In this document: positions 3,089-18,963 of the stretch, piece after piece | How the letters are laid out: every line of letters begins with the position of its first letter | How positions within the stretch are numbered: position 1 is the stretch's first letter | Source: Lytechinus pictus | Lineage: Eukaryota | Length of the DNA stretch: 64,000 bases | NCBI RefSeq assembly: GCF_037042905.1 | Contig: NC_087246.1 | Coordinates: forward strand, 61,256,001-61,320,000 | Direction of reading: 5' to 3' | Made by a program: the position numbers and the translations under genes | The notes under the pieces: model-generated | What the model was told of the DNA's origin: nothing | The model's database searches: none | The model's input: only the letters and a program-made list of their open reading frames with translations

Positions 3089-5722
3089 TTGTTTCAAATA
3101 AAAAGGGTCTAGGAACGGAAACTACCATACGTTAGTCACGTGACGTTGTACACAGAAATATGCCATGTTCTGCCTGCTCGATCTCAAAGTTTGGGAGAAA
3201 AATGAGATGTAACCATTATACCAGTCATAAAGTATTATACATCAAGCTGTAGGTAATCCATTTAGCATTGAGATGACAATCAATCTCGACCTTTCTGACC
3301 CTTAGGGATATTCCAGGGGGAAAACAAAGGTGCTGGTGTCTCGAAAATATGGGTGGTTTTCGACCGTTTGCCATAACAAGATTTGTGAACATGGACACTT
3401 TCAAATCAACAGCGAGACGTAAATAGTGACTTAATTGTAATAATATTTACATTAAATTAATGGAATTTGATAAAATTTTCACACTATTATCAATCTGGTG
3501 TGAGATTATTAATAGTTATAAAGATATATTCCGATTTCTGCAATATTACGTTCATGAAAACAACTGTTCCCTGTGTTGAAGCTGTGTGTGTGGACTTTCG
3601 GACACTCAAATGCACGCGACTAACCATTATGTTTTGCGCTGTGCGCTCGCATTATTTGATTTGCCAAGTAGGCCTACATATTGTCTTTGTTTATTCCATA
3701 AGATTCATTATATATCAATTATATAACAAACTAATTATTATCCCCCTTTTATGACAGTTTATCAAAAATTTCGTCTCGCGATTTGCGCTCGCAATAATTT
3801 TTACAAATATATCAACTCATGAACCCTATTCATGATTACAAAAGTTTTTCATGCCTCAATGTCAACAAATTTCACTCACTCATTAGGCTTATTAAATTAA
3901 TAAATATGATGATAAAATTTTCATGAATTCCTAATAACTAAATTGTCCCCTTTTCAGAAAGGAATATCGGCAAGTTTCATATCGCACTTAGGAAGAGGAA
4001 TATTTTTTTTTTTCATATGATTACAAAATGTCCTTTGGCCTAGAATGTCCAGGTCCTAGGTCAAAATAGTAATAAAAATATCAGCTCGCGCCCTCGCTCT
4101 CGCATAATTTATTAAGTGCTATCCACATCCACTTCATAATTCCACTACACAGTGCTTAAGATACTAGTAGTGCTTAAATTCACCCTTTTCATAACGGATC
4201 AAATTTTATCATATTTTCTGCTCGCGCTTCCCGCTCGCATTATTCATTTTCATGATAAAAAATGAAATGAATTCAGAATGCCCAGATTCTGTCTAAATCT
4301 AAAACGCGCGCACACATGTTTATTGAATACGCAGCTTGATCTTTATTCAAAACTTGCTAAAATTATCCAGTTTCAGATCAGAACATCAAAATTTTTATGC
4401 TTGCGCTTTGCGCTCGCATCATTAATGTAGGAAGATACCAAATTACCCATCCTTTTTCATGATTTACAAAACAAGAATAGGGTGTCCAATTTTTAGGTCT
4501 GAAATCTCATTTTTTTTCCGCTCGCGCTCCGTGCTCGCATCATTATTGTTCGGTTAGTTACCTATACCGTTATCGGTTACAAAAAGTGCTTAAAATGTCA
4601 ATTTTTTTTAGGTCGGAATGTCAAAAATTTTCAGCTCGCGCTTCGCGCTCGCATTATTTAATAATAGTTAAAATATGCATCGTCCTAATGGTTAACTGCA
4701 AAACGTTCTTAACAGGTCCCTTTTTGATCAAGCCAGAACCCATATTAAAAATTACTGCTCGCGCTTCGCGCTCGCAGTAATGATCTAGTTACATAAGTAT
4801 CCTGTTCAGGTTTACAAACTATCTAAATAGGGCTTATGAGATTATTACACTTATCTAAGAATGAAGCTAAGAAATGACTGTTAAGACATGGGCGTTTTGC
4901 CCCCCCCCCCCCATTTTTCACCACCAAGAAAAAAAAGAGAAAAGGAAAGGGATAAGAAAGGAACATAGGCCTATTTTTTTTTCCAAGTGTTATGTAAAAA
5001 ATGTCAAAATTTTTGCTCGCTCGCAACTTCTTATTCATTTTTGTTAAGCTCATTTCGCCACTGGGACAACCCCTTCAAAGAAACAAACAAAATTCAACTA
5101 TGAGCGGCCGATCGGGGAAAATATGGATGAAAAAAATTCGCCCCCCCCCCCCTATTGGCGGAAGCTGGATCCGCCCCTGGCTACGAAATCCTACGACACA
5201 CTCAGAACCCATTTCCCTGATCTTACGGAAACGCACTAGATTGAGATGTCTTGTAAAGTAGATTCTTTAGAGGATGCCCGACTGCTGCGCTGCATCGTTT
5301 TGTCTTTTTTGATGCCGATTAAGGTGAGATAATATTAGAATTGTTGAAAAAGATATTGCCCTTTTCAGTTTGCAGTGTGTGAGTGGATATTCCATGTGCA
5401 ATTCGCATTATTATTATGAAGATTTATTGAATTATAACCTCTCCTTCGTGTGTGTGGTTTGTTCTTGGTATTCACAGCGCAAACAGGCCCAGGCCAGGGA
5501 GCTCCGCCGCCAGGCTAGGGCCGACTCGTGGCCAAGCTCTGGTGCGACTTACCTCAACTTGATGTTCGTGCAGGCTCCACTCCACTTCAGTCACTACCGC
5601 TGCACTACGCTCCACCCACCCGAACCTCAAGGTGGTGAACTCATTTTGATAGTTTGAGTGACAAAGGTGGGGAAAAGTGCATAATTATAATTTATAGTGA
5701 AAAATATACGTCGAAACGGCAT

Positions 5723-6093
5723 TATAGTAAACTGACTATATGGATGTTAACCTAAATAAAGTAAGCTGGATTACCGAGAACCATATACTCACCTTAATCC
5801 TGGGTCAGTCCGTCTTAATCTTACAAAGGATGAAGACTTCGATGACTTGTAAGTATATAGAGCTTGTCGTAGAACTTGTAAGTAGACTTGTCGTAGAACC
5901 TGATGACTCGTGTGAACTTGAGGGACGTATACGTAGTAGACTGTAGTACTGTACTGATCGAGAGCTGAACGTGAGAATGCGTCTGATCTTGGGATCCTGA
6001 TTCTGCGTACGTATGGAGGGTTTCTGGGGGGCATGGTCGCACGCACGGTCGCGCGTATTGTAGCACTTCGCGCGGGCGACCAAGTTCCCCATA
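5723..6093 (-). repeat. 3' LTR (371 bp)
   Basis: Identical by eye to 17590-17960 (offset 11867). The ORF-track peptides in both copies are identical. Confidence 0.95.
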
Positions 6094-6101
6094 TTCCCCC
6101 C
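6094..6101 (-). promoter_or_regulatory. Polypurine tract
   Basis: GGGGGGAA on the minus strand directly abutting the 3' LTR. Confidence 0.8.
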
Positions 6102-6574
6102 AACCGTAAAAATAAAGGGGAGATTGATTATTAACTGTACTTTCCTAATCACTCATGTAGATATAAAGATAGGTCTGAGGAGTGGACAAAAAAGTAACAA
6201 TAAACCGGTACATGTAGTACCAGGAATAAAAACACTCGTCCTAGACCCCTGAAAGGAACTATTTACTTCCCAGTATCTCGGAAATATCACGAAAACATAT
6301 ACTAAGGAAATTTAGGTTTCTTTCCCTATACTCGTGGGCATTAAACAGACCCTCAAAAAACTTTATTGAACATATACATATATATGTATACGTATGTCTT
6401 TAGGTTACGAGCTACTAAGCATGTAGTTCATGTAGTTCATGTAGTTCATGCGTGAAAAGGACTATTTACACACAAAAAAAATATGGATGGCCCCAAATCT
6501 CAATCCCCAAACTTTGGAGGATGATAACCAAGTAATAAGCCTTGCTTGACCAGCAGACTTTAAAACTAAATTGA

Positions 6575-6870
6575 AGACCATATCGCCTGGATATCATTAA
6601 AGGAAATGTATAATTTTACCTGTGACGTCACTCGGCACAATGGTTGAAATAACTAAAAAACTTTGTGTGACACAACTTGGCACAATATTGTCTTTGAAAA
6701 CCAAACCTATATCCGCTGGATAGTATGTAAAGAAATTTATAAACTCACTTGTGACGTATTTTGGCACCACGGTTGGAATAAATATAATATCACCTGGATA
6801 TATAACTTTACGTGCGACACAATTTGGCACAATATTTCAAAAAACTAAACCAATGTCCCTTGGGCTTTAT
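6575..6870 (-). repeat. Degenerate motif array in the retrotransposon 3' UTR
   Basis: Four copies of TG(T/C)GAC-N5-T(T/C)GGCAC (about 6621, 6666, 6750, 6813) interleaved with ATATC..CTGGA motifs (about 6580, 6709, 6788). Confidence 0.6.
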
Positions 6871-7214
6871 GGAATATAAGAGTCCGCAACCTTTACCAGT
6901 CCCTGAAGACTAAGGAGGGTCCGAAAGATGACAGCCAACAGACACTTTCCACTTGGGAATGTAAAATCTGGTCTAGTTCGGCCCGGTACGTTGGGAAAAC
7001 TTCTCAGTCCTTCTCCGCCACGATACAGAATAGAAACGTTCTCCGGAGAGAGAAAATACTGCATCGCAGAAGAGAAGAACCTAAGACCCCTCAATTACAT
7101 GGATAGGCCGCGACTTTATCTTTTAATTAACCTCCAAAGTAGGAAGGGCAAGATTTTGGACAGAAAAATAAAACATGAGACAGGGGCCACCAAAAAAAAG
7201 AATAACATACCCTA

Positions 7215-8507
7215 TTACCCTAACAGGCCATACAGTAGTTTTGCATTGTATGTGGCTTGGGCCATTATAGTGGCCAAGGGCTGCCCCCGCAGGTTGGCTA
7301 CCACCGCCCCCACATCACCCAGGCTTTCAGGTGAAGTCACCGTCATGTCCGGGCGAGGAGGGAGATGCGGAGCATCGGTCTCCAGAATTAGCCGATCCGC
7401 GGGGACGGCCCTAAGGCCTTGAATTTGTTCTGTTGTGAAGTACGCTGCCATCCCGGCAATACCGAAATAGCAATATGGAAAGGCAGCGATCCATTTCCCG
7501 GCTTGCAAAGCATCGCTGGAGAAGTTATGGATGTGTATCCTTTGGAGTGGGGAGCAGTGCTTTGCAAGAAGCCGGCGGGCCAAAGTGTGCGCCGCGTACG
7601 CGGTATTATTCTTCGAATCACCCCTTAGGTGAAGGATAAGGACCCTCCCTTGGGTGCCCTGACCAAGAAGTCGCAGAAAGAGCGCTTCCTGGTCAGGCCA
7701 CCACTGGGAGTTGACAGAAAAGTCAAAGCCCAGTTCGCTTACGCCTACAACCAAGGGGCTTTGAAGTAGGGCAACCAAACGCTGCCACTGATCTTCGGTG
7801 TACTGTGAGGCCTGTTTAGGGTGTATCCCTACTGCTAATCTCCAGCTCCCGTCCCTCTTGTTGTATGGGGGGCTGTGAGCCAGCACCCGGGAAAGAAAGC
7901 CGGGGTCCATAAAGAACTCTGGGTCACAGAAGTTCAGGACCCCTCCGACTATCTCTACCGGGTGCTTTGTCACCACGCTCTTCCCCTTTCTCTTACTGTA
8001 CCAACCACACCTGTCTGGGTGAAAATGGCTATCAAACCCTAGTAGAGGCGGGGGATGGGAGCTCGGAGCAGGGGCGGGGGCATCCATTAAAGAGAAATCT
8101 TCTCGGTTGAGGTAATTCAAGAGACCCCTCCCTCTCCCCTTACTATGGAAAGTACCGGGCGTGCCGGGTGTTATGGGACCCTTGCGGACCCTTGCGAACC
8201 CTCTCCCCCTCCCCATTCCTTTGGATGGCTTAACGCCCTTCATCATGACAGGGGCAGGACCGGGAGTTTCCTTTAGGGAATTAGGGGAATCCCTGGACCC
8301 TGCCCTTAACCGACTCCGTAATCGACGCAACTTACGGAGCCACGTACGTTTTTGTCTACTGCCAGGGGGCGGGATTGGGCCCATCCGTGCATCTATTTCT
8401 GCTTGCCAGGCAGCCTCTGGAGGGATAGCCTCTGGGGGGGTAGAGGGGGGCCGGGTGTCCATTTCCACCTCGAAGGTTGACTCGGCGTGGAGTTCTAGCT
8501 CATCCAT
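7215..8507 (-). CDS. Retrotransposon ORF3: TatD-family (TATDN2-like) metal-dependent nuclease with a ~155-aa basic/Pro-rich N-terminal extension, 430 aa
   Basis: TatD motifs in order: FDSHFH (DxHxH), NFCDP (TATDN2-like), VGIHP, SELGFD (GEIGLD-like, Glu retained), LILHLR, IHIHNF, LILETDAP. Intronless, lying between pol and the 3' LTR. Confidence 0.92.
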   Translation of the reverse strand: MDELELHAESTFEVEMDTRPPSTPPEAIPPEAAWQAEIDARMGPIPPPGSRQKRTWLRKLRRLRSRLRAGSRDSPNSLKETPGPAPVMMKGVKPSKGMGRGRGFARVRKGPITPGTPGTFHSKGRGRGLLNYLNREDFSLMDAPAPAPSSHPPPLLGFDSHFHPDRCGWYSKRKGKSVVTKHPVEIVGGVLNFCDPEFFMDPGFLSRVLAHSPPYNKRDGSWRLAVGIHPKQASQYTEDQWQRLVALLQSPLVVGVSELGFDFSVNSQWWPDQEALFLRLLGQGTQGRVLILHLRGDSKNNTAYAAHTLARRLLAKHCSPLQRIHIHNFSSDALQAGKWIAAFPYCYFGIAGMAAYFTTEQIQGLRAVPADRLILETDAPHLPPRPDMTVTSPESLGDVGAVVANLRGQPLATIMAQATYNAKLLYGLLG

Positions 8508-8530
8508 CTGAAAAGAGAAAAGGAAATGGG
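8508..8530 (-). promoter_or_regulatory. 3' splice acceptor immediately preceding the TatD ATG
   Basis: Minus strand reads pol stop TAA-CCCATTTCCTTTTCTCTTTTCAG|ATG. Confidence 0.75.
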
Positions 8531-11500
8531 TTACCCACAGCTACAAAAAGGACAAAAATACTTGTCAATAGACATTCCTTCCGCATGGGTAACACCAACA
8601 CATGCACCATGGAACCACTCATCGCACCCATCACATTGAATCATGAACGATCCATCGTCGGGGGTTCTACAGTAGCAATACCTTTCCTTCCTCCAGTCAG
8701 GGCCTGAGGGCTTGGCCTCGTCAAGGCACCTTTTGAGCTGGTCATGGTTTACAGTCAGGGCCTTGTTCCGATAGATCACCCGGTATACATAAGGGGTATA
8801 TCGCTTCACGATAATAGCCGGACCCTTCCAGGGAGATTGCAGCTTCTTGCATTTTCCCTTGGGGGTCGCCTTGGCGAGAAGGTATACTCGGTCCCCTTCT
8901 TTAAATTGCCGCAAGTATACCTTTATGTCGTAATCCCGCTTCAACCGTCGCTGTGTATTCCGGAGGGTGGCTCTCGCAGCATCGTGCGCCTCTCGGATGC
9001 TCTGGGATAACTGAGATGAATATTCATCCAGAGGTCGGTCAGAGACGGATGGGGGAAGTGGAAAAATCAGCTCCGCTGGTTGATTAGTTTCACGCCCCAG
9101 CATCAATTGATTGGGCGTGAATCCCGTACTACGGTTGATCGTGGAACGAATCGCTCCAGCGATCTGGGCGAGGTTGTGGTCCCAATGAGTCTGGGACTTC
9201 CCAATGTAGCACCTTACCGCATCCATTAAGGTTCGGTTGAAACGTTCAACCTGGCCGTTTGCGGAAGGTCGGTACGGGGTAGTCCTAGCCTTATGTATAT
9301 GGAGCAGTTTACAGATGTTCGTGAATAACCTGCTCTCAAAATTTCTGCCCTGATCAGTAAAAATCTGGAATGGATAGCCAAAGCGGCAAAAGAACTCGCT
9401 AATGGCTGCCTGAGCGGTTACTTCCGCTGTCTGAGAGGGCAGTGGGACACACTCAACCCACTTGGTGAACTGGTCCACCATCATCAAGATGTACACGTTA
9501 CCTCGTGAGGTTTTGGGTAAAGGACCCATGAAATCGAGGTGTACACGTTCCATCGGGGCCCCCGCATGATAAGTTATCATGGGGTGTTTCCCATACCTCA
9601 CGGCTTTCTTATTTTTATTACAGACGGCACATCTCCGAATATACTCTTGGATGTCGCCCGACATACCATACCAGTAGTATTTGGACCGAAGTTTACCTTT
9701 AGTACGGTTCACACCAGCATGAGCTGCTGAAGGAGGATCATGATTTAGCTTGATCACTTCAGTACGCAAAGACTTGGGCACTACAAGTAGGAGATTGTCA
9801 TCGCCTTTACGCCAAATGACACCATCCTTAAGCACAAACAGCTCTCGGTTGACCCATAGGAACTTTCCAGCGGGGTCCCACAGAAGAACAGTTCCCTCGT
9901 CTGGTTCCTCTTTATCGAGCAGCCATTTGCGCAAGGGGGTCAGTTGACCATCAGCCTCTTGTTCTTTCCGAAGAAAGTCCATTGAGGTGAGGTCGATACC
10001 AGACCCGGCATCATGGGTTACCCCGTTGACCCTAAAAGAGAATGGACCGTCGATTGGACCAATATCCAGGTGAGTGATAAAGAGGTCCTCCGATTCTCCG
10101 GGGTCAAGGGTAACTTCCGAAACTTTACTCCTTTGTGCCAATTGGATCACATTGTCCACAGCATCAGTGAAGTGTGCCCAGTTTGTGTGGGCCTTCAGAC
10201 AGTATGCACAACCACCACAGGGCAAACTCTTGGGGTCAATACCCAGACGGTAGTTCTCACATGTAAAGTCGCCGTCGGGTATACGAGACAATGCATCTGC
10301 ATTCTGATGTTTCTTGCCAGGGCGGTGTTCAACTGCCATGTCATATTGGCCCAGTTCTTCGAGCCACCGGGCAAGCTGCCCTTGAGGCTCCCTAAAGTTC
10401 ATTAACCATGTCAGACTCCCATGGTCCGTGCGAACTGTAAAAGGCTTTCCGAGGAGGTAATGCCTATACTGGCGGGTAAACCGTACCACTGCCAACAGCT
10501 CACGCCTGGTTACACAATAGCGTCGTTGTTCAGGGGTCAGGGAAAAACTGCCATATGCAATAGTTCGCTCTTGCCCCTGTTGGACTTGGGTTAAAACAGC
10601 CCCAATAGCTGTGCCAGACGCATCGGTATCCAGAATGAACGGATCCGTGGAGTTGGGTAGTGCGAGGATAGGGGCGGTGGTCATGAGCCTCTTGACTTCC
10701 TCAAAAGCCACTTGATGCTGGTCCTCCCAGCGGAAGTCATTGTTCCCAGTGAGGCCATAGAGTGGCCCTACAACCTGGGCATAGTCTTTAAGGAAGACAC
10801 GGTGATAATTTACAAGTCCGAGGAGCCGTTCCACCTCCTTTGTGGACTTAGGGGTGGGCCAGTCCACTACGGCTTGAACATGCTCTTCCTTAAGGTGGAG
10901 ACCATTCCCATCAACCTCTCTACCAAGAAACTCTACCCGACGTTGGAAGAAGGAACATTTCTTTGGCTTCAACTTAAGCTTAAAGTCCCTAAATCGTTCC
11001 AACACCTGTCTGATGTTAGTGACGTGATCAGAGAAAGAGGTGCCGAGCACTACAACATCATCCAAGAAGGCTAAAGCGATATCCCAGTTCAATCCCCTGA
11101 GGATGAGATTCATTGCTCGAGAGAACGTGGCTGGGGCATTACATAAGCCGAAGCCCATGCGAACAAACTCGTATAAACCATACTTGGTGATAAATGCTGT
11201 CTTTTCACGGTCTTCCGGCCTGAGATTGACTTGCCAATAGGCAGAATTTGCATCTAGTTTGGAGAACCATGAATTCTCTGCTAAGGTATCCAAACACTCT
11301 TCGATGCAAGGAAGCGGGTAGACATCTTTCTTCGTAACGTTGTTAAGTTTACGATAGTCTATACACCAACGGACGCTACCGTCCCGTTTTCGGATTAAGA
11401 CAGGGGCGGACGCCCATTCCGACATCGAAGGTTGGATCACCCCGGCGGACAGCATTTTGTTAAGACATGCTCGCTCCTCTTGAACAAAGTTCATGGGTGT

Positions 11501-12883
11501 ACGCCTCATCTTTTGCTTGATGGGCGTAGCTTCGCCTGTGTCGATTGAATGGGTAATGGCTGTGAAATTACCCAAGTCGAATTCATCCCGGGCAAAGACA
11601 CCCTCAAATTCTAGCAACAAGCCCTTTAATATTCCTTGCTGTTCAGGAATTAAGTGTTCCGAAGATCGTTTCCAAAGATCTTCCAAATGGGTGGGGATTC
11701 TGGCATCCCCAGTCAAGTCAACCTGGCTGACACTTGGAATAGGATTGTCAAAGTCGGGGGGTTCTCTAGAACCTACGCGAGAAGCCTGTCCAAGGTGTTG
11801 ACCTTTATCCCAATGGATGGAAACATCAGTAGCATTCACAGCATATAACTGTATAGAGCTACTCCCAGAATGCAATGTGCGGGGAACCAATCCTATAAGG
11901 GCAACATCCGGCTCTACCATAAACTGGTCAAACGTGCAAGAAGAATCAAGTTCGCATTGTACTCGTTTGACTGACATTGGGGGGATGGTCACAGAATTTG
12001 AAACGAAAACCTGAGAGGTATCAGTGTCTTCACCACAAGTCATTGTAATGCACTCGCCCTGAAAGATTAACAAGGAATCCGGTATATTGATGAATGCACT
12101 GTGCTTCTTGAGGAGATCAGCTCCAAGCAGCATATCATCGTCTATCGGGGCAACATAGACGCATTCACTAAACGTCTGGCCACCTAGAGTCATATCAACC
12201 GGTCCTACAATTATTCCAGTCATACTCATATTTCTTCCAGCTGTATTTAGGACGACTGACCTAATAACTGGAGGAGCGGGGCGTAGTGCATGGTAGATTT
12301 TATCAGACATTATAGTCACCTCTGCAGCAGTATCGATTACGGCACGCATCAATTGGTTACCGACCAATATATTTATGCTATAAGTAGATGATGACTTTAT
12401 CCGGCAGACTACAACGTCCGAGGCCTGTTCGAGGTCCTTCGGGATCCAGCTATCTAATTGCGGATTCTCTTCAGGGGGTGGCCAGGGGGGTACCAACCAG
12501 GGGCTGGGCTCCAATGGAGGCCTAGGCGTATCAATCACCTGGCTGATGGGGGGTGGAGAGGAGAGTTCCTTGACACTCGGAACTTTCCCTGACCCTTCAG
12601 TGATACCAATACCGTCCTGACCGCCATCTCTCAGTTCGGATTCTTTAACAATCAAATCAGGAGAGGGAACACCCAGTTCCTTACTTCCTCTGGGAAGAGA
12701 GTCTTCGCTATCCAACGACCTGTTAGCCTCAAGTACTACCAAGGATATATCTGCTTCTTGCTCCTCTTGAGAGAGCGAATCCTCTAAAAGTACTTTGGCA
12801 TTTTCGGATTCCAAATTAGAATTGGGGTCCGCTTTTAGTGGGATCGGGGTCGGACCTCCTCCTCCGATCCCGAATCGTTTCCC
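8531..12883 (-). CDS. pol: Pol polyprotein (aspartic protease, RT, RNase H, integrase, C-terminal PHD finger), probably made as Gag-Pol by -1 frameshift
   Basis: IDTAA (protease). WCIDYRKLN, FGLCNAPATF and FLDD (RT). TDAS, RELLAV, TDH and NADALSR (RNase H). H..H..CAVC, LDFMGP, TDQG and QVERFN (integrase), followed by a GPY/F-like WKGP. The pol frame is open from the slippery site at 12883; the ORF-track start at 12814 is a TTG. Confidence 0.95.
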   Translation of the reverse strand, partial: GKRFGIGGGGPTPIPLKADPNSNLESENAKVLLEDSLSQEEQEADISLVVLEANRSLDSEDSLPRGSKELGVPSPDLIVKESELRDGGQDGIGITEGSGKVPSVKELSSPPPISQVIDTPRPPLEPSPWLVPPWPPPEENPQLDSWIPKDLEQASDVVVCRIKSSSTYSINILVGNQLMRAVIDTAAEVTIMSDKIYHALRPAPPVIRSVVLNTAGRNMSMTGIIVGPVDMTLGGQTFSECVYVAPIDDDMLLGADLLKKHSAFINIPDSLLIFQGECITMTCGEDTDTSQVFVSNSVTIPPMSVKRVQCELDSSCTFDQFMVEPDVALIGLVPRTLHSGSSSIQLYAVNATDVSIHWDKGQHLGQASRVGSREPPDFDNPIPSVSQVDLTGDARIPTHLEDLWKRSSEHLIPEQQGILKGLLLEFEGVFARDEFDLGNFTAITHSIDTGEATPIKQKMRRTPMNFVQEERACLNKMLSAGVIQPSMSEWASAPVLIRKRDGSVRWCIDYRKLNNVTKKDVYPLPCIEECLDTLAENSWFSKLDANSAYWQVNLRPEDREKTAFITKYGLYEFVRMGFGLCNAPATFSRAMNLILRGLNWDIALAFLDDVVVLGTSFSDHVTNIRQVLERFRDFKLKLKPKKCSFFQRRVEFLGREVDGNGLHLKEEHVQAVVDWPTPKSTKEVERLLGLVNYHRVFLKDYAQVVGPLYGLTGNNDFRWEDQHQVAFEEVKRLMTTAPILALPNSTDPFILDTDASGTAIGAVLTQVQQGQERTIAYGSFSLTPEQRRYCVTRRELLAVVRFTRQYRHYLLGKPFTVRTDHGSLTWLMNFREPQGQLARWLEELGQYDMAVEHRPGKKHQNADALSRIPDGDFTCENYRLGIDPKSLPCGGCAYCLKAHTNWAHFTDAVDNVIQLAQRSKVSEVTLDPGESEDLFITHLDIGPIDGPFSFRVNGVTHDAGSGIDLTSMDFLRKEQEADGQLTPLRKWLLDKEEPDEGTVLLWDPAGKFLWVNRELFVLKDGVIWRKGDDNLLLVVPKSLRTEVIKLNHDPPSAAHAGVNRTKGKLRSKYYWYGMSGDIQEYIRRCAVCNKNKKAVRYGKHPMITYHAGAPMERVHLDFMGPLPKTSRGNVYILMMVDQFTKWVECVPLPSQTAEVTAQAAISEFFCRFGYPFQIFTDQGRNFESRLFTNICKLLHIHKARTTPYRPSANGQVERFNRTLMDAVRCYIGKSQTHWDHNLAQIAGAIRSTINRSTGFTPNQLMLGRETNQPAELIFPLPPSVSDRPLDEYSSQLSQSIREAHDAARATLRNTQRRLKRDYDIKVYLRQFKEGDRVYLLAKATPKGKCKKLQSPWKGPAIIVKRYTPYVYRVIYRNKALTVNHDQLKRCLDEAKPSGPDWRKERYCYCRTPDDGSFMIQCDGCDEWFHGACVGVTHAEGMSIDKYFCPFCSCG
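12826..12883 (-). promoter_or_regulatory. -1 programmed ribosomal frameshift signal (slippery heptamer plus H-type pseudoknot)
   Basis: G GGA AAC in the gag frame (12877-12883), a 5-nt spacer, stem 1 GGGATCGG/CCGATCCC and stem 2 GGTCCG/CGGACC. Pol is in the -1 frame. Confidence 0.85.
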
Positions 12884-14994
12884 AAATCTTCACAGACAAA
12901 GGAAACGCTCGGTCGGGGGCCTCGTTCTGGACACTCGTTCTTGAAGTGTCCAGACTTTCCACAGTGGAAGCAGGCACCAATACGACCCGGTGACATATTC
13001 CCTCGGGCAGGAGATGCTCTGCCTCTACCACGAGGAGAAACTACTAACTTTTTTACACTCTCAGCTAGGCTTTGAACAGTAGCCGGCAAAGACCCAAGTG
13101 CTTCCAATTGCTTTAGTGCAGAGTCCATCTTCCCTTCTAAAGCGGAAACCCTTCGCTCTAAAACGGTATACGCTGGGGAAGTAGGGGGCGCACTCACCTG
13201 CCTTGCGGTTGGTTCAAGGGGGGTCTTTTCAGACAAGGAGACATGTTTAACCTCCCTGCGCGGTTTCCCATAAATAGCTCGGTGTGAGTGTTGATACCAT
13301 TTAACAAGATCAACAGCCTCTTCCACGGTCTTAGGTCTGGAATTGAGTGCATGTTGCCCAGCTTCCTTATCTGCGGAGCCCTGGCAGAAACGCATCACTA
13401 CCTGCTGCTGCACATATGCCTCGGGCAAATTAGGAAAAGCCTGAGAGGCTAAGGTAAGCAACCGAGCAGCCCACTTGGTGACATTCTCGTCAGGGGCCTG
13501 TCTTGCATAAGAGAAATTCATTTGCGATACCTCAGGCATTTCTTTAAGTGTGAACCTCTTTTCCATCCTATTCACCATAATGTTATATGGCATATCGGGC
13601 TCTCGCTCAAGAAGCGTGGCTAAATAGGAGCTAGCCTCCCCATCTAACGTCCAACATAAGTAATTACGCGATTGTTTGGCGTCCCACCCATTCTCACTGG
13701 CGAATAATTTAAACTTCGCAATGAAGGCTTGCCAGCTGCCCGTACCGTTAAAGGTTATGGACTTTGGCACCGAAACCAGTCGGGGTCTGTCCCCTTCCCC
13801 TGTACTGGTACTTAAGGATCTTCGTACCGGTGGTGGGTTGTGGGACTCGAAATCATGCTCTTGGGATTGGGGGGCCTGCGTTTCAGGGGCACGGTTGATG
13901 GCAAATAGTGATTGCAAAACACGCGATGATAAATCAACTGCTACGTCTTCATTTGACTGTCTTGCATCCCGCCTATTGTGGTCTTGTGTTCTTCGGGGGG
14001 ATGATGACCTACGAGGGCCATGGTCAGGCGAGTGGGAACGGTTAGAGTTTGACCTATGCCAATCATCACGACCTCTACACGGACTGTGATTACCCCTATA
14101 ATATCGTGGGGGAGAATCATAACGGTCATTTCGATATCGGCGAGGGGAATAGCGATACCTGTTCCTATAGTAGTCATATCGATCCCTACTGCGATCATAA
14201 CGATCCCTACTCCGATCATAACGATCCCTACTATGATCATATCGATCCCGCCTGTGACCTCTAGGTGACCCTTGTCGGCGCCCACCATAATCCCGAAAAG
14301 GAGAATCATATCGACTATCCCGGCGGTTTGTACGTGGTGATCCACGGCGGCTGTTGTGGCGACCAGATGTGGGTGACCGAGATATAGGTGACCCGTGGCT
14401 ACCCCTTGGTGGGTTAGCATGATCCCTAGATGACCTAGGACTGGCCTGGTCACTTGAGGGTGACTTCATAGGGGAAGAAAGCCCATCATCCTCACCTTCC
14501 CTCGGTGGGGGTGTGCGTTTTCGCGGCGAAGAGAAAACCACATGCTTCCGTGAGGGCGAATTGCCTCTAGCTACCTTATCTCTGCGTGAGCTGGCAGCCC
14601 CTGACTCTCCACTCTCTCTCCCCATTACTATTTTAAGATGTCCTGGCAACGAATCTTGAGGATAGGATTCAAAAGGGTAGGGAGAGGGGGATTGGGTTGG
14701 CTGCTCATCGCCCACCTGTGCTGCTACATCACCTGCCGCAGCAGGGCCTACTATCACTCTTTCCTCAATAGAATCGGTAGAATTTGTGCCAGATTCTAAA
14801 ACAGCATAAGGGGCAAAATCAAAATACCCTGCAATCTCAGAGGCATTACGTATGTGCGGAATATCTAAGAAAGTTTCCATCGTAATATCATTAGCCTCTC
14901 GGAGGACCAATATTCGCTCGGCCAAAGTACTACCAATTCCTGGGACCTTCAATAGCTCCTCTGGCTCACAACAATTAATTTGAATCTTGGACAT
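12835..14994 (-). CDS. gag: Gag, 719 aa: N-terminal helix-hairpin-helix, RS/RD low-complexity tract, capsid-like region, coiled coil, CCHC zinc knuckle
   Basis: INCCEPEELLKVPGIGSTLAERIL (HhH); FNGTGSWQAFIAKF...NGW capsid-like region; CFHCGKSGHFKNEC knuckle. Located upstream of pol. Confidence 0.9.
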   Translation of the reverse strand: MSKIQINCCEPEELLKVPGIGSTLAERILVLREANDITMETFLDIPHIRNASEIAGYFDFAPYAVLESGTNSTDSIEERVIVGPAAAGDVAAQVGDEQPTQSPSPYPFESYPQDSLPGHLKIVMGRESGESGAASSRRDKVARGNSPSRKHVVFSSPRKRTPPPREGEDDGLSSPMKSPSSDQASPRSSRDHANPPRGSHGSPISRSPTSGRHNSRRGSPRTNRRDSRYDSPFRDYGGRRQGSPRGHRRDRYDHSRDRYDRSRDRYDRSRDRYDYYRNRYRYSPRRYRNDRYDSPPRYYRGNHSPCRGRDDWHRSNSNRSHSPDHGPRRSSSPRRTQDHNRRDARQSNEDVAVDLSSRVLQSLFAINRAPETQAPQSQEHDFESHNPPPVRRSLSTSTGEGDRPRLVSVPKSITFNGTGSWQAFIAKFKLFASENGWDAKQSRNYLCWTLDGEASSYLATLLEREPDMPYNIMVNRMEKRFTLKEMPEVSQMNFSYARQAPDENVTKWAARLLTLASQAFPNLPEAYVQQQVVMRFCQGSADKEAGQHALNSRPKTVEEAVDLVKWYQHSHRAIYGKPRREVKHVSLSEKTPLEPTARQVSAPPTSPAYTVLERRVSALEGKMDSALKQLEALGSLPATVQSLAESVKKLVVSPRGRGRASPARGNMSPGRIGACFHCGKSGHFKNECPERGPRPSVSFVCEDLGNDSGSEEEVRPRSH

Positions 14995-17576
14995 GATTCG
15001 ATGAAGGGTGACTAAATTTTGAAAGTTCTATCTTACGCTAACAAGCACCTAAGTACTGAGTAAAGCTCCTTCGAAAATCAGAATTATCACTGATCAGTGA
15101 TCACCACCAAATAGGATTGATCACTTTCAATCATCAATCTTACCAGAGAGCTAAACAACAACAACTAAAAACTAAGTTTGTTTGGAAAACCTAATTATTA
15201 AAATTTATCAAAGGTTTAAAGCTCTGATATGGCCAATATGAGGCCTATATTATTTAAGTACAAATGTGTAAATATACCGAAAATAAAACACTAGCCTCTA
15301 CTCCGATGCTGAGCTAACCAGGTGCACCCAGCACCTATATGTGTACTAAGTAGAAAATGCCTCCACTGCTGACACAAAAGTTTAAATTATCTTCGGGCGT
15401 ATATATATATACTTTGCTTATCCCTTATCTATAAGCTTTGTATACTGAAAACACCCTTCAGATAATTAAAAACTAAAAATGACCTTGCTTGTCGATGACC
15501 AAAGAAAATGACCAAATACTGATATAAAATGGTCCAATCCTTGACCCAATACTAATATGAACTAAGAATACCGAAATAAATTACAAGCACCCTATGCTCT
15601 TATAATTAGATGGAAGTTCTAAATATTGTATCTCAAAGTCAAATTTGTTTGGAATAATTCTTTCCTATATAAACTCGAATTACAGATTCAAAACTTTCTA
15701 TCTCAGAACCGAATGAAAATTTTATTTTCTTTTTTATTCAAAGCAAAATTTATATAAGTATTTCTTTTCTCGAAATGACAAGAAGTTCAAGTATTCACTA
15801 AGTAAGTCAAATTTCTGTTCCAAAGAACTCCTAAATGTAAACGTACAAACGATCAAGCAAAATCCTAACTCTAGATCAGCTTAAACAATCCACAAAGGCC
15901 CTATTAATAATATCGTCGTACTTTTAATTGACAGCAGGTGCGACTTTGCAACAAACTACCGGTGGCCAGAGATTGTTATAACGGTCAAAATATATAATCT
16001 TTAACTCCAATAAACTATTAAGTTTTTTTCTCTAAATAAATTCCCCACGGGTGTACGGAAGTCTGAATAGATTAAGTACGAGAGAGTTTTTGGAACTACA
16101 CTAACGCAAGTAGCGTCGGATTATAATGAGACGGACCGTATTATAAAAATACAAAGTCAAAAGTTAACTTTCAGTCCTAAAATAAAATTAGCACAATAAT
16201 TGTCCAAAATACGAGCGTCACCAATGTACGTGACGGGAATCAATGAGTATATTCACTAAATCCGAAGACAAGTTAGGCCAATATAATATAATTGGTCGAG
16301 TTCCCAGACTTATGTTCAAGCTCCAAAAAATACTCTAAGTATTCACCGACTGCCTAAGTAATTAATTAATATATATACCATCCACTAAAATTTGTAGCTT
16401 AATGCCACTCTAAATATAAGCATTGGTGGCTTGCAACGGCATATAAAATATATCAATCACTCCTTATTTTTATTTATTTATTTTTTATTTTATTTATTTC
16501 TTTTTTTTTTTTTTTTGGAGATGATATCTTAATACCGAAATGAAATCAAATTGATCATTAAATAAAGTCCACAAGAGAAACCCGACGTACTAAAGTCGTA
16601 TGAGGGTAACTCCGTTTTAGCCAGATAACACTAGGATAATTTCATACAAAAAAGTCACGGTATAATTCAGACTTCACGCACCTATAAAACGGCAATAGTA
16701 GAAACCTCCCTATATGCAAAACGGCAATCTAAACGGCGCCGAATAAATCCGTAAAACGGCAACCTAACTGGCGCCAAAAAATGATTACTGCAAGACGGGA
16801 AAATCTGTATAAGAAATGGTCAAAATTCGTTTTCACACGTAATATCAATACACGACCTCACGAATCAAGAACGGCATATACAGAATCATCATAACTCAAC
16901 TACTCAACGTACGTAGATTCCTCGTCGTCTGCTACAGCTAACGGGGGGAAAGTCAGGTTAAGCAATACGATCTTTCACCAATCACGCAATCATTAAATCA
17001 CCAACAGCCAAATTCAACAATAAATATATATCTCAGTTACGTACAATTCCTAAATTTAATTATCCTACATCAAAATTCAAATCCTAATTTAATTAAATCC
17101 TAACAGGGAAAGAGGGTACATACAAATTTATCACCAGAACCACACCCCAAGCAACTCTCAGGCAAGGCATACATTCAGCCCTAACACACAATAGAATGCG
17201 GGGAGCGGCGAACAATAGAAAACGTTTAACGCTATTTGCATAAATGGCGTGCCCTACGTGGCGTCCTGCCACACCCAAAATTTAAACCGGGTTAAGGGGA
17301 TAGTGTAAGGGTTTAAAACCTACGCAAAAACGCTGAGAATAAGCCCTAAAACACTGCTATTATTTGTTTAAGATAACTATAATACAGATCTATATCGCTG
17401 TAGGACGGCGGATTGAATCAAAAGTTTAAACAATTTATAAAGAGTGCGATTTACTTTGCCGCCCTACGGTACACTTTTCCCTACTTTTAAGCACTTAAAA
17501 CGATGTCTAGCCAATTTAGTTTTCTGCGCCGCTTGTTTTACTGCATTTACAAAACTAGCGCAGAGTCGTGTTCATA

Positions 17577-17586
17577 CGCAGCGCCA
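17577..17586 (-). promoter_or_regulatory. Primer-binding site, tRNA-Ser-like
   Basis: TGGCGCTGCG, 3 nt downstream of the 5' LTR. It is complementary to a tRNA 3' end ...CGCAGCG-CCA of the kind seen in animal tRNA-Ser; the isotype was assigned from memory. Confidence 0.75.
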
Positions 17587-17589
17587 ATA

Positions 17590-17960
17590 TATAGTAAACT
17601 GACTATATGGATGTTAACCTAAATAAAGTAAGCTGGATTACCGAGAACCATATACTCACCTTAATCCTGGGTCAGTCCGTCTTAATCTTACAAAGGATGA
17701 AGACTTCGATGACTTGTAAGTATATAGAGCTTGTCGTAGAACTTGTAAGTAGACTTGTCGTAGAACCTGATGACTCGTGTGAACTTGAGGGACGTATACG
17801 TAGTAGACTGTAGTACTGTACTGATCGAGAGCTGAACGTGAGAATGCGTCTGATCTTGGGATCCTGATTCTGCGTACGTATGGAGGGTTTCTGGGGGGCA
17901 TGGTCGCACGCACGGTCGCGCGTATTGTAGCACTTCGCGCGGGCGACCAAGTTCCCCATA
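17590..17960 (-). repeat. 5' LTR (371 bp), containing consensus splice donor AAG|GTGAGT at 17662-17654
   Basis: Direct repeat of 5723-6093, followed by the PBS on the minus strand. Confidence 0.95.
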
Positions 17961-18012
17961 GCATTAAAAAAAAAGCTTAAAAACTTTGCATGCGCATGCG
18001 CGAGGGTCCGGG

Positions 18013-18963
18013 AAGCCTGGAGGCGTCTGGGGAGTGAAAGTAATATACTGTACGTATGGTCACTCCCCTAACGCCTGGCATTGTGATGTATAGACTCCTA
18101 CGTACCGAGGGAAAAGGCAACTATAAAAATGCGCCAAACTGCTAGTTATGTTTAGAATCTGAGGTCACGACTGCTGTACATTGGTAACAATATTGGTTGG
18201 CAACGTTTGGCAAAAAATGGATGGTAATGGTTACAAAATGACGAATAAATTATATGAAGTAATAAAAGTAGAAGAGAGTTTACTTACACTTGTTGACATC
18301 GCCATCTTTGATCCTTTGTTAAAGCAACCTAGTTACGTGACGCGTATAGAGGGCGGCAAAATCATGAGCGGTGCTAGATTAAAAAGTGCTAAAATGTCCT
18401 GCTTCAACTGAACTATAAATACGTGGAAGTCGTGTACACCCTAGCAAAACATCGCCGGCGAACTCGATAAGTCACGTGACCGCCGCCATTTTGCTAGGTC
18501 AATTGTTCGAGAACGCGCCGTAGAAGGCAAGATGCAATATGTTTTCTCTATGTATTTCTAGTTCAGTGGTTGAAGCGGGACATTTTAGCACTTTTTAATC
18601 TAGCACCGCTCATGATTTTGCCGCCCTCTATACGCGTCACGTAACTAGGTTGCATTAACAAAGGATCAAAGATGGCGATGTCAACAAGTGTAAGTAAACT
18701 CTCTTCTACTTTTATTACTTTATATAATTTATTCGTCATTTTGTAACCATTACCATCCATTTTTGCCAAACGTTGCCAACCAATATTGTTACCCATGTAC
18801 AGCAGTTGTGACCTCAGATTCTAAACATAACTAGCAGTTTGGCGCATTTTCATAGTTGCCTTTTCCCTCGGTACGTAGGAGTCTATACATCACAATGCCA
18901 GGCGTTAGGGGAGTGACCATACGTACAGTATATTACTTTCACTCCCCAGACGCCTCCAGGCTA
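18013..18963. mobile_element. Young ~950-bp palindromic non-autonomous DNA transposon (about 410-bp near-identical arms; Academ-like xAGCCTGG...CCAGGCTA ends)
   Basis: 18014-18427 is the near-perfect reverse complement of 18546-18962. Flanked by the direct repeat GGTCCGGG (18005-18012, 18964-18971). Superfamily assignment is tentative. Confidence 0.8.

What the first reader, a model, noticed from the sequence alone, without database searches (positions are those of the whole stretch)
7215..8507. Gypsy retrotransposon carrying an intact TatD/TATDN2-like nuclease in the env position
Seen: an uninterrupted, intronless 430-aa ORF lies inside the LTR boundaries, on the same strand as gag/pol and 23 nt after the pol stop. 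All TatD metal/catalytic motifs are retained (HxH, E, H, H, ETD), plus the FCDP motif typical of TATDN2. Established: TatD proteins are TIM-barrel 3'-5' ssDNA/RNA exonucleases with AP-endonuclease activity, and human TATDN2 is reported to degrade the RNA strand of R-loops. The third ORF of Gypsy elements is normally env or absent, and I know of no described TatD-encoding LTR lineage. Inference: this is a captured and retained accessory nuclease. It could process RNA:DNA hybrids or cDNA ends, trim integration intermediates, clear R-loops at target sites, or counter host small-RNA or nucleic-acid-sensing defences.
Basis: partly seen in the sequence, partly recalled or inferred. Interest (0 to 1): 0.95.

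Follow-up and report, generated by a model that had tools for sequence, protein, structure and literature searches.

The report
Gypsy retrotransposon lineage encoding TatD nuclease
A complete, recently inserted Gypsy-type retrotransposon in a sea-urchin-type genome carries a third gene after gag and pol that encodes an intact TatD/TATDN2-like metal-dependent nuclease, and because the same three-gene layout is kept in other sea urchins and in a scallop, the nuclease is a long-retained accessory enzyme of a whole element lineage and not an accident of one copy.

Summary
Window 7215-8507 (minus strand) is an uninterrupted 430-aa ORF that starts 23 nt after the pol stop. It lies inside a 12.2-kb Ty3/Gypsy element with 100% identical 371-bp LTRs, a 5-bp target duplication, a PBS and a PPT. 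The ORF matches Pfam TatD_DNase over the full model (102 bits), keeps every metal-binding and catalytic residue, and folds as a confident TatD barrel behind a basic, largely disordered N-terminus. It is not a one-off. A second copy lies on another chromosome. The same order (gag with a helix-hairpin-helix motif, then PR-RT-RH-IN-PHD pol, then TatD) recurs with open ORFs in S. purpuratus, Lytechinus, Diadema, Pecten maximus and marine metagenome contigs. TatD divergence tracks pol divergence, and dN is far below dS. A polypyrimidine-CAG signal sits directly before the ORF3 ATG in five families, which suggests env-like expression from a spliced mRNA. The closest named relative is Lytechinus "TATDN2" (50% identity). 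That host gene nests inside the element clade, so the direction of transfer is open. I found no paper describing TatD in LTR elements. The nearest precedent is the DEDDy exonuclease ORF3 of bdelloid rotifer elements. Verdict: real, a new variant of a known kind. The biochemical role is only inferred.

The parts
5723..17960 (-). Complete Ty3/Gypsy LTR retrotransposon, 12.2 kb, sense strand is the minus strand
   Evidence: LTR pair, TSD, PBS, PPT and three open ORFs
17590..17960 (-). 5' LTR (371-bp match; 370 bp if the shared last base belongs to the flank)
   Evidence: 100% identical to 5723-6093
5723..6093 (-). 3' LTR
   Evidence: 100% identical to the 5' LTR
17961..17965 (-). Target-site duplication AATGC, upstream copy
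   Evidence: Read directly; the same 5 bases follow the 3' LTR
5719..5723 (-). Target-site duplication AATGC, downstream copy (overlaps the last matched LTR base)
17654..17662 (-). Splice-donor-like site AAG|GTGAGT (9/9 match to the consensus) inside the 5' LTR
   Evidence: S. purpuratus L003 has an 8/9 site at the equivalent end of its LTR. Function is inferred.
17577..17586 (-). Primer-binding-site-like TGGCGCTGCG, 4 nt after the 5' LTR
   Evidence: the same 10-mer follows the LTR in S. purpuratus L003
14995..17589 (-). 2.6-kb leader without an ORF of 80 aa or more
12835..14994 (-). gag, 719 aa: N-terminal helix-hairpin-helix motif, PNMA/capsid-like region, CCHC zinc knuckle
8531..12889 (-). 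pol reading frame. It is open from 12889, is -1 relative to gag and overlaps gag by 52 nt. Domain order is PR-RT-RNase H-IN-PHD.
   Evidence: the RNase H acidic catalytic positions are kept against Ty3
8508..8530 (-). 23-nt pol-ORF3 spacer: polypyrimidine tract ending in CAG directly before the ATG (3' splice-site-like)
   Evidence: 17 of 18 pyrimidines. Equivalent signal in L003, L005, L088 and L090.
7215..8507 (-). ORF3, 430 aa plus stop: TatD/TATDN2-like nuclease
8058..8507 (-). ORF3 N-terminal region (aa 1-150): basic (net +10), rich in Pro, Arg and Gly, mostly disordered, with confident helices at aa 30-42 and 51-68
7218..8057 (-). ORF3 TatD TIM-barrel domain (aa 151-430) with a complete metal site
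   Evidence: Pfam, pLDDT mostly above 90, Foldseek top 17 hits all TatD family
6094..6105 (-). Polypurine tract GGTTGGGGGGAA abutting the 3' LTR
6106..7214 (-). 1.1-kb non-coding stretch between ORF3 and the polypurine tract

Best explanation
ORF3 is a functional accessory gene of an active Ty3/Gypsy lineage whose members share three unusual features: a helix-hairpin-helix motif at the gag N-terminus, a PHD finger at the integrase C-terminus, and a third ORF for a TatD/TATDN2-type nuclease.

Shown: the window copy is complete and young. ORF3 is intact, keeps every TatD metal ligand and is predicted to fold as a TatD barrel behind a basic, disordered N-terminus. The same layout is kept under purifying selection in at least four echinoid genera and one bivalve, and ORF3 divergence tracks pol divergence.

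Inferred: gag is translated from the full-length RNA and pol by a -1 frameshift. ORF3 is expressed as retroviral env is, from a subgenomic mRNA spliced from a donor in the 5' LTR to the acceptor that abuts its ATG. By analogy with human TATDN2, where the disordered N-terminus binds R-loops and two glutamates drive Mg-dependent degradation of the RNA strand, the protein binds RNA:DNA hybrids or structured RNA through its arginine-rich N-terminus and degrades RNA.

Most likely role (speculative): clearing RNA:DNA hybrids that the element meets or makes. These would be residual hybrids on its cDNA, or R-loops at the transcribed chromatin to which the PHD-bearing integrase is expected to steer integration. 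It acts beside the element's own RNase H, which is intact, and does not replace it.
For: Element anatomy.

TatD identity: Pfam 102 bits over the full model; bacterial TatD structures as the best sequence hits; AF2 model with the barrel mostly above pLDDT 90; Foldseek top 17 PDB hits all TatD family; catalytic columns kept in 121-139 of 140 relatives.

Conservation:
- A second copy on another chromosome is 99.6% identical with all three ORFs open. Its ORF3 differs by 2 substitutions, both synonymous.
- S. purpuratus L003 has 100% identical LTRs, a TSD and three open ORFs.
- L. variegatus L004.
- Diadema L090 has 99.5% identical LTRs.
- Pecten maximus L088 has 100% identical LTRs and a TSD.
- Metagenome contigs with the same gene order.

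Selection: window versus S. purpuratus gives dN 0.32 and dS about 2.3 for the TatD domain, against dN 0.13 and dS 1.57 for pol. All ORF3s are open at saturated dS.

Co-divergence: pol and TatD identities correlate at r=0.90.

Splice signals. Background is 0.2-0.3 acceptor-like sites per kb.

Other points: the RNase H catalytic positions are intact. There is no hydrophobic segment. The TATDN2 biochemistry comes from PMC10711561.
Against: - I had no transcript or protein data, so the splice model rests on consensus matches. A second 9/9 donor-like site lies within gag, no strong donor was found in the Pecten LTR, and L004 has no strong acceptor signal.
- In one metagenome contig the PHD finger and TatD lie in a single called ORF (P0006), which hints at expression as part of pol in some families.
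- dS is saturated in every cross-family pair, so omega values are rough.
- Only two copies of this exact family were seen.
- The substrate and role are by analogy only.
- NCBI named several element ORF3s after bacterial TatD, YabD or YcfH, and vertebrate TATDN2 could not be fetched for comparison. The subfamily label therefore rests on one automated host-gene name and a clade-specific motif.
Confidence: 0.7

Rival explanations
1. One-off transduction: a host TATDN2 mRNA was retro-copied into this single element copy and has no role in the element.
For: ORF3 is intronless, and the best named hit is a host 'TATDN2'.
Against: The same ORF3 follows pol in seven or more independent loci from five named species of two phyla, with pol identity down to 50%. 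Identity to the host gene is only 50%. dN is far below dS.
Confidence: 0.02
2. ORF3 is made without splicing, either as a C-terminal extension of Pol (frameshift or fusion) or by termination-reinitiation after the pol stop 23 nt upstream.
For: ORF3 is in the -1 frame relative to pol, as pol is to gag. The spacer is short in several families. In the P0006 contig, PHD and TatD share one called ORF.
Against: The ORF3 frame overlaps pol by only 7 nt with no slippery run. Spacer length varies from 23 to about 190 nt. A pyrimidine tract plus CAG 0-8 nt before the ATG recurs in five families, including a mollusc, although the sequence itself is not conserved.
Confidence: 0.2
3. ORF3 acts on host nucleic acids as a counter-defence. 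For example it trims small-RNA precursors or removes cytoplasmic cDNA or RNA by-products that would trigger sensing, and does not serve replication or integration chemistry.
For: TatD enzymes are 3' exonucleases on RNA and ssDNA, and human TATDN2 cuts hairpin RNA (PMC10711561). The element already has an intact RNase H, so a second hybrid nuclease is not obviously needed for replication. [quoted passage not shown]
Against: Nothing in the sequence points to this role specifically. The constant co-occurrence with a chromatin-reader PHD on integrase and a DNA-binding HHH motif on gag suggests a nuclear, DNA-linked role.
Confidence: 0.25
4. Direction of transfer is host to element, and recent for this family. 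The window-type ORF3 (short N-terminus) would be a secondary replacement taken from the echinoid host TATDN2 gene, and the host gene would not be a domesticated ORF3.
For: The window ORF3 groups with Lytechinus host TATDN2 (bootstrap 85) and shares its short basic N-terminal helix motif. It is closer to that host gene (50-52% in the domain) than to the Lytechinus element ORF3 (42-45%).
Against: The host genes sit inside a clade (bootstrap 78) whose other members include element-borne ORF3s (P0004, P0006, P0008). In the host gene the whole ORF3-like architecture is one 2.2-kb terminal exon behind three tiny exons, as expected for exonisation of an element ORF that already carries an acceptor. 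Only NJ trees were made, deep nodes are unsupported, and there is no vertebrate outgroup.
Confidence: 0.3
5. ORF3 is catalytically inert and serves a structural or env-like role.
For: It occupies the env position.
Against: All metal ligands are kept across 140 relatives. There is no signal-like or transmembrane-like segment (maximum 19-aa hydropathy 1.36). It has a globular TIM barrel with a TatD active-site fold.
Confidence: 0.03

Closest known systems
Bdelloid rotifer LTR retrotransposons Juno and Vesta with an enzymatic ORF3 (DEDDy 3'-5' exonuclease or GDSL esterase), PMC5408684
   Same: A Gypsy-type LTR element whose third ORF, downstream of pol, encodes a host-type hydrolase instead of env. 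One type is a 3'-5' exonuclease acting on RNA or ssDNA. Catalytic residues are kept and there are no transmembrane segments. An auxiliary role in the replication cycle was proposed.
   Different: The fold and family differ: a DnaQ-like DEDDy nuclease there, a TatD amidohydrolase-type TIM barrel here. The rotifer ORF3s are family-specific, were gained more than once and showed no clear departure from neutrality within the genome. The TatD ORF3 co-diverges with pol across two phyla with dN far below dS.
TATDN2 (vertebrate R-loop RNA nuclease), PMC10711561 and PMC12709183
   Same: The architecture is the same: a long disordered N-terminus followed by a C-terminal TatD domain. The glutamates equivalent to those needed for activity are present (E258, E376, and D378 in the E-x-D motif). 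The best named database relative is a sea-urchin gene annotated 'putative deoxyribonuclease TATDN2' (8e-100, 50% identity).
   Different: ORF3 is encoded inside a mobile element, is intronless and has a much shorter N-terminus (150 aa). Orthology to vertebrate TATDN2 was not testable here. NCBI named several element ORF3s after bacterial TatD, YabD or YcfH instead.
Errantivirus-type Gypsy elements and retroviruses (env as ORF3 from a spliced subgenomic RNA); established knowledge
   Same: The position of the third ORF, and the predicted expression through a splice acceptor at the end of pol.
   Different: The product is a soluble nuclease and not a membrane fusion glycoprotein. It has no transmembrane or signal-like segment.
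Chromoviruses and other retrotransposons with chromatin-reader domains (chromodomain, PHD, MBD), PMC6673714
   Same: The integrase of this lineage ends in a PHD finger, a reader domain of the kind thought to steer integration.
   Different: It is a PHD and not a chromodomain, and it is combined with two further add-ons (HHH on gag, TatD as ORF3). I found no description of that combination.
Bacterial TatD, YcfH and YabD (solved structures 1j6o, 1xwy/4pe8, 1yix, 2gzx)
   Same: The best sequence matches among solved structures (E 8e-13 to 7e-10), with the same fold and metal ligands.
   Different: Identity is only 24-35%. The eukaryote-type clade separates from bacterial TatDs with bootstrap 100 and has its own C-D-P signature and N-terminal extensions.

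Membership tests
TatD_DNase family (Pfam PF01026) | Profile match above the curated cut-off over the whole domain | tested here: met
   102.2 bits against a cut-off of 27, model positions 1-253 of 253
TatD_DNase family (Pfam PF01026) | Metal and catalytic residues: HxH, bridging Glu, two His, and Glu/Asp of the E-x-D motif | tested here: met
   H161, H163, E258, H293, H327, E376 and D378 are present. The same columns are invariant in 30 of 30 bacterial TatDs and kept in 121-139 of 140 clade members.
TatD_DNase family (Pfam PF01026) | TIM-barrel fold of the TatD type | tested here: met
   In the AF2 model the barrel is mostly above pLDDT 90. The top 17 PDB Foldseek hits are all TatD family, with target TM-scores of 0.54-0.80.
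TatD_DNase family (Pfam PF01026) | Metal-dependent nuclease activity | not testable with these tools
   No biochemical data
TATDN2 subfamily | Long disordered N-terminal region plus a C-terminal TatD domain (PMC10711561, PMC12709183) | tested here: met
   aa 71-141 have pLDDT below 50 and the TatD domain is at aa 151-430. Relatives have N-termini of 100-1300 aa.
TATDN2 subfamily | Closer to TATDN2 than to TATDN1, TATDN3 or bacterial TatD | tested here: inconclusive
   The top hit is a Lytechinus gene that NCBI names putative TATDN2. TATDN1 and TATDN3 chains did not reach E 0.001 by sequence. No vertebrate TATDN2 sequence could be obtained, and some element ORF3s carry bacterial-type names.
   C-D-P is a signature of the 140-member clade and is absent from bacterial TatDs. 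Whether vertebrate TATDN2 has it was not testable. PMC10711561 reports two catalytic-site cysteines peculiar to TATDN2 among the human paralogues.
Ty3/Gypsy (Metaviridae) LTR retrotransposon | LTR pair, TSD, PBS and PPT | tested here: met
Ty3/Gypsy (Metaviridae) LTR retrotransposon | pol domain order PR-RT-RNase H-IN, and gag with a CCHC knuckle | tested here: met
   The RNase H region matches Ty3 best (7q5b and 4ol8, E about 1e-23).
Errantivirus-like (env-bearing) Gypsy | ORF3 encodes a membrane glycoprotein (signal peptide, transmembrane anchor) | tested here: not met
   No hydrophobic segment. ORF3 is a TatD barrel.
Chromovirus | Chromodomain at the integrase C-terminus | tested here: not met
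   The C-terminus is a PHD finger (PF00628, 1e-09) and there is no chromodomain hit.
LTR elements with an enzymatic non-env ORF3 (PMC5408684) | A third ORF after pol, inside the LTRs, encoding a host-type hydrolase with catalytic residues kept | tested here: met
   The enzyme family (TatD) is not among those described there: a search of that paper found no occurrence of TatD.

The most novel reading that the evidence does not exclude
The multi-exon genes annotated 'TATDN2' in Lytechinus, and possibly other invertebrate 'TATDN2' annotations such as the one lying among transposon-derived genes in the giant-squid Hox cluster, may be domesticated copies of this retrotransposon's ORF3. They would have been exonised through the splice acceptor that the element already carries in front of ORF3. 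If so, a retroelement-borne R-loop-type nuclease has been recruited as a host gene, and part of what databases call metazoan TATDN2 is of mobile-element origin.
Probability: 0.35. Interest if true: 0.8.

Novelty: new variant of a known kind. Interest (0 to 1): 0.7.

Why it matters
LTR retrotransposons were long thought to add only env or small reader domains. Enzymatic third ORFs are a recent and poorly understood addition to that picture. Here a TatD/TATDN2-type nuclease, the family now linked to R-loop removal and germ-cell genome stability in vertebrates, is a stable, selected component of a Gypsy lineage. The lineage spans echinoderms and molluscs and still looks active, with identical LTRs in three species. 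This gives a natural system for asking what an RNA:DNA-hybrid nuclease contributes to a retroelement. It also warns that 'TATDN2' and 'TatD-like' gene models in invertebrate genomes are often element ORFs. Finally, it raises the testable possibility of gene flow between a host genome-maintenance nuclease and a retroelement, in either direction.

Tried and rejected
1. The scan of metagenome contigs with the clade alignment used too general a peptide pattern. It returned only bacterial TatD loci at 24-32% identity, so it was of no use for context.
2. A word-indexed search with the Lytechinus host TATDN2 domain returned only 7 proteins and no TATDN2 from other phyla. Vertebrate TATDN2 could not be obtained by any permitted route, so orthology is untested.
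3. dN/dS: every cross-family pair except window versus S. purpuratus, and S. purpuratus versus L. variegatus ORF3, had incalculable (saturated) dS. Only the direction (dN far below dS) is used.
4. A -1 frameshift from pol into ORF3 was considered because the frames stand in the same relation as gag and pol. I set it aside because the overlap is only 7 nt.
5. 'TatD replaces a dead RNase H' is rejected. All four acidic catalytic positions align with Ty3 RNase H.
6. An env-like role is rejected.
7. An ATG just after the acceptor of the Lytechinus host terminal exon looked like a relic ORF3 start, but it is out of frame with the gene model, so I do not use it.
8. Literature searches for TatD or TATDN2 together with LTR retrotransposon, gypsy, retrotransposon or transposable element found no description of this architecture. 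Repbase, Dfam and GyDB could not be consulted.
9. The BFVD fold search found one TatD-like fold in a giant virus and none among reverse-transcribing viruses.

- In notebook entry 3 I wrote two short shorthand strings summarising conserved residues of the ORF3 N-terminus.
- While working I inferred the kind of break in the L. variegatus pol from alignment bounds. No places are given.
Full report
**1. Observation**

The window holds no N. On the minus strand lie three consecutive ORFs:
- gag, 12835..14994, 719 aa
- pol, 8531..12814 as listed, 1427 aa
- a third ORF, 7215..8507, 430 aa, starting with ATG

The pol stop is at 8531-8533, so 23 nt separate it from the ORF3 ATG.

A 371-bp direct repeat, 100% identical, brackets everything at 5723-6093 and 17590-17960. 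The LTRs are flanked by the 5-bp duplication AATGC. A TGGCGCTGCG primer-binding-like site lies 4 nt inside the 5' LTR, and a G-rich polypurine tract abuts the 3' LTR. The pol frame is open from 12889, is -1 relative to gag and overlaps gag by 52 nt.

Pfam gives PR, RT, RNase H, integrase zinc-binding and core domains for pol, plus a C-terminal PHD finger. For gag it gives an N-terminal helix-hairpin-helix motif, a PNMA-like region and a CCHC knuckle.

**2. What ORF3 is**

ORF3 matches Pfam TatD_DNase over the entire model (102 bits against a cut-off of 27). The best solved-structure relatives by sequence are bacterial TatD, YcfH and YjjV (E 8e-13 to 3e-07). Human TATDN1 and TATDN3 do not reach E 0.001.

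An AlphaFold2 model built on 36 sequences has a mean pLDDT of 79.8. The barrel (aa about 150-430) is mostly above 90. Residues 71-141 are disordered, and two confident helices lie at aa 30-42 and 51-68. Foldseek against the PDB returns TatD-family structures as the top 17 hits.

H161, H163, E258, H293, H327, E376 and D378 occupy the columns that are invariant in bacterial TatDs. These columns are kept in 121-139 of 140 related eukaryote-type domains.

The N-terminal 150 residues are rich in Pro, Arg and Gly and carry a net charge of +10. No 19-residue stretch is hydrophobic enough for a membrane segment. ORF3 is thus a soluble, apparently catalytically competent nuclease and not an env.

**3. 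Not a one-off**

The window is part of assembly GCA_037042905.1, record CM073227.1. The tools did not name the species.

A second copy lies on another chromosome (L002). It is 99.6% identical, has its own 100% identical LTRs and different flanks, and all three ORFs are open. Its ORF3 differs by two substitutions, both synonymous.

The same gene order recurs in the following loci:

| Locus | Species or source | LTRs and TSD | gag, pol, ORF3 |
|---|---|---|---|
| L003 | S. purpuratus | 100% identical LTRs, TSD AGATT | gag 49%, pol 78%, ORF3 50% overall and 62% in the domain; all three ORFs open |
| L004 | L. variegatus | no LTR pair detected | pol about 62% and interrupted once by a frameshift; ORF3 open |
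| L090 | Diadema setosum | 99.5% identical LTRs | pol 55% in one uninterrupted match; ORF3 847 aa; inside an intron of a host gene |
| L088 | Pecten maximus (scallop) | 100% identical LTRs, TSD TAGG | pol 50% with PR-RT-RH-IN-PHD; ORF3 876 aa |
| L005, L006, ERZ26222911 | marine metagenome contigs | not assessed | L005, L006 and one ERZ26222911 contig (P0004) show RH-IN-PHD followed by TatD; L006 and the P0004 contig also have an HHH-bearing gag; in a second ERZ26222911 contig (P0006) the PHD and TatD share one called ORF just after the integrase |

All ORF3s examined are free of internal stops.

An exhaustive profile-free search found 94 clusters (at the 50% identity level) with E of 1e-30 or better, and 705 with E of 1e-10 or better. 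Many have long N-termini and a C-terminal TatD domain. Those carrying names are echinoid or bivalve proteins, plus two entries labelled as a bacterial MAG that fall within the eukaryote clade.

**4. Selection and co-inheritance**

Between the window and S. purpuratus:

| Region | dN | dS |
|---|---|---|
| pol | 0.13 | 1.57 |
| ORF3 TatD domain | 0.32 | about 2.3 |
| gag | 0.39 | saturated |

In all more distant pairs but one (S. purpuratus versus L. variegatus, dS about 2.1) dS is saturated, yet every ORF3 stays open. ORF3 is therefore constrained: less than pol, and about as much as gag or more.

Pairwise pol identity and TatD-domain identity across six elements rise and fall together. From the window the pairs are 0.78/0.62, 0.62/0.42, 0.57/0.36, 0.50/0.33 and 0.50/0.30, with Pearson r=0.90 over 20 directed, non-independent pairs. 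This is what co-inheritance since a common ancestor of these families predicts.

**5. Expression signals**

The 23-nt spacer in the window is a pyrimidine tract (17 of 18) ending in CAG directly before the ATG. Equivalent tracts end as follows:

| Locus | Distance from tract end to the ATG | Pyrimidines in the 18 nt before the AG |
|---|---|---|
| S. purpuratus L003 | 2 nt | 16 of 18 |
| JGI contig L005 | 5 nt | 13 of 18 |
| Pecten L088 | 8 nt | 16 of 18 |
| Diadema L090 | 4 nt | not counted |

The sequences themselves are not alignable. Such sites occur at only 0.2-0.3 per kb in the window.

A perfect donor consensus (AAG|GTGAGT) lies in the 5' LTR, 70 nt before its end. S. purpuratus has an 8/9 site at the corresponding end of its LTR.

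I infer an env-like spliced subgenomic mRNA. This is not shown: a second perfect donor-like site lies in gag, no strong donor was found in the Pecten LTR, and L004 lacks a strong acceptor signal. A frameshift from pol into ORF3 is unlikely because the overlap is 7 nt. One contig has PHD and TatD in a single called ORF, so the expression mode may vary between families.

**6. Relation to host TATDN2**

The best hit of the exhaustive search is an L. variegatus protein that NCBI names 'putative deoxyribonuclease TATDN2' (8e-100, 50% identity). Its gene spans 20.5 kb. It has three very small 5' exons and one 2.2-kb terminal exon that contains the whole ORF3-like architecture. No gag or pol remnant lies in the 26.5-kb locus.

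In a neighbour-joining tree of 170 TatD domains, the eukaryote-type group separates from bacterial TatDs with bootstrap 100. The Lytechinus host genes are sister to the window ORF3 (bootstrap 85). Both sit inside a clade (bootstrap 78) that contains element-borne ORF3s.

ORF3 N-termini come in two forms:
- A long form with a Cys/His zinc-finger-like motif and a helical module. It occurs in L004, L005, L006, Diadema and others.
- A short form with a basic helix, which is window aa about 43-69. It is shared by the window, S. purpuratus, two metagenome ORF3s and the Lytechinus host genes.

Either the host gene is a domesticated ORF3, or this sub-lineage replaced its ORF3 from the host. The data lean slightly towards domestication but do not decide. 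I could not obtain vertebrate TATDN2, so 'TATDN2-like' rests on the host-gene name, the shared architecture (disordered N-terminus plus C-terminal TatD, as described for TATDN2 in PMC10711561 and PMC12709183) and the clade-specific C-D-P triplet.

**7. Mechanism**

Established knowledge:
- Bacterial TatD is a Mg-dependent 3' exonuclease on single-stranded RNA and DNA.
- Human TATDN2 is a Mg-dependent RNA 3' exonuclease and endonuclease that degrades the RNA strand of R-loops. It needs E593 and E705, and it needs its disordered N-terminus to bind R-loops (PMC10711561).
- Medaka tatdn2 is expressed in germ cells and is required in primordial germ cells (PMC12709183).

The element's own RNase H keeps all four acidic catalytic positions when aligned to Ty3, so ORF3 is an addition and not a replacement.

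My best inference is that ORF3 binds RNA:DNA hybrids or structured RNA through its arginine-rich N-terminus and degrades RNA. It would do so either on the element's cDNA intermediates or at R-loop-prone transcribed chromatin, where a PHD-bearing integrase would be expected to act. The invariable trio of HHH-gag, IN-PHD and TatD argues for a co-adapted, DNA- and chromatin-linked module. A counter-defence role against host RNA-based or sensing pathways is the main functional rival.

**8. Comparison and novelty**

The nearest described precedent is the DEDDy 3'-5' exonuclease or GDSL esterase ORF3 of bdelloid rotifer Juno and Vesta elements. That paper does not mention TatD (PMC5408684). PHD fingers in retrotransposons are known (PMC6673714).

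Full-text searches pairing TatD or TATDN2 with LTR retrotransposon, gypsy, retrotransposon or transposable element found no description of this architecture. One incidental hint is a 'TATDN2' gene listed among transposon-derived genes inside the giant-squid Hox cluster (PMC6962438). Among predicted viral structures only one giant-virus protein has this fold. Repbase, Dfam and GyDB could not be checked.

I rate this a new variant of a known kind: a new enzyme family as a selected ORF3, conserved across two phyla. Interest is 0.7, and higher if the link to host TATDN2 proves to be domestication.

**9. Limits**

- No expression or biochemical data.
- NJ trees only.
- Saturated dS.
- Few loci per species.
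- The hosts of the metagenome contigs are unknown.
- The species of the window's assembly was not given by any tool.
- Two minor slips are declared under 'tried and rejected'.

Noticed in passing
window 8543-8677 (minus strand; pol aa 1380-1424): The integrase ends in a PHD finger (PF00628, 1e-09) and not a chromodomain. The same is seen in S. purpuratus, Pecten, TARA and JGI relatives. It is a likely chromatin-targeting module.
   Followed up: partly
window 14887-14988 (minus strand; gag aa 3-36): gag begins with a helix-hairpin-helix (HHH_3/HHH) DNA-binding motif. It is conserved in L003, L006 (40 bits, above the cut-off), L088 and an ERZ26222911 contig. This is unusual for a Gypsy gag.
   Followed up: partly
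window 14995-17589: A 2.6-kb leader between the 5' LTR and gag has no sense ORF of 80 aa or more. A T-rich low-complexity run lies at 16467-16516. The S. purpuratus relative has tandem repeats in its leader and in gag.
   Followed up: no
window 18014-18408 and 18569-18962: A roughly 400-bp inverted repeat, 98-99% complementary with a loop of about 160 nt, lies about 50 bp outside the 5' LTR. It looks like a foldback or MITE-like structure.
   Followed up: partly
window 5550-5722 vs 19136-19296: Sequences flanking the element on both sides match each other in inverted orientation at 82% identity, so the element sits in or next to another repeat.
   Followed up: no
L007 3001-23559 (L. variegatus 'TATDN2'): This host gene has three tiny 5' exons and one 2.2-kb terminal exon holding the entire ORF3-like protein. 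It groups with the window ORF3 (bootstrap 85). L. pictus has two such genes, 97% identical in the domain.
   Followed up: partly
L004, L005, L006, L090 ORF3 N-termini; P0006, P0010, P0123, P0130, P0135: Most ORF3s carry a longer N-terminus with a Cys/His zinc-finger-like motif and a conserved helical module of about 100 aa. The window-type ORF3 lacks it. No Pfam family matches it.
   Followed up: partly
L002 12801-13178 and 20138-20515: A second, unrelated LTR pair (378 bp, 100% identical) with a weak gag-like match lies directly beside the second copy of the element.
   Followed up: no
P0290, P0291, P0292, P0297; P0294 (Geosiphon pyriformis): A separate set of short proteins of about 350 aa fuses one or two CCHC zinc knuckles to a TatD domain. 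A glomeromycotan fungal protein also matched the clade profile. This may be another nucleic-acid-linked or element-linked TatD group.
   Followed up: no
P0137, P0145 (named 'MAG: TatD family hydrolase [Sedimenticola sp.]'): These are 754- and 782-aa proteins with the eukaryote-type TatD domain. They fall inside the eukaryote clade and are probably eukaryotic contigs mis-binned into a bacterial MAG.
   Followed up: no
L089 10001-13378 (Pinctada imbricata): A 1125-aa TatD-domain gene of the same clade has no gag or pol within 10 kb upstream. It is either a solo or domesticated copy or a host gene.
   Followed up: partly
L090 1-19179 (Diadema setosum): The Diadema element lies within the span of a host gene model that has a faint HENMT1 C-terminal hit, so it is an intronic insertion.
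   Followed up: no
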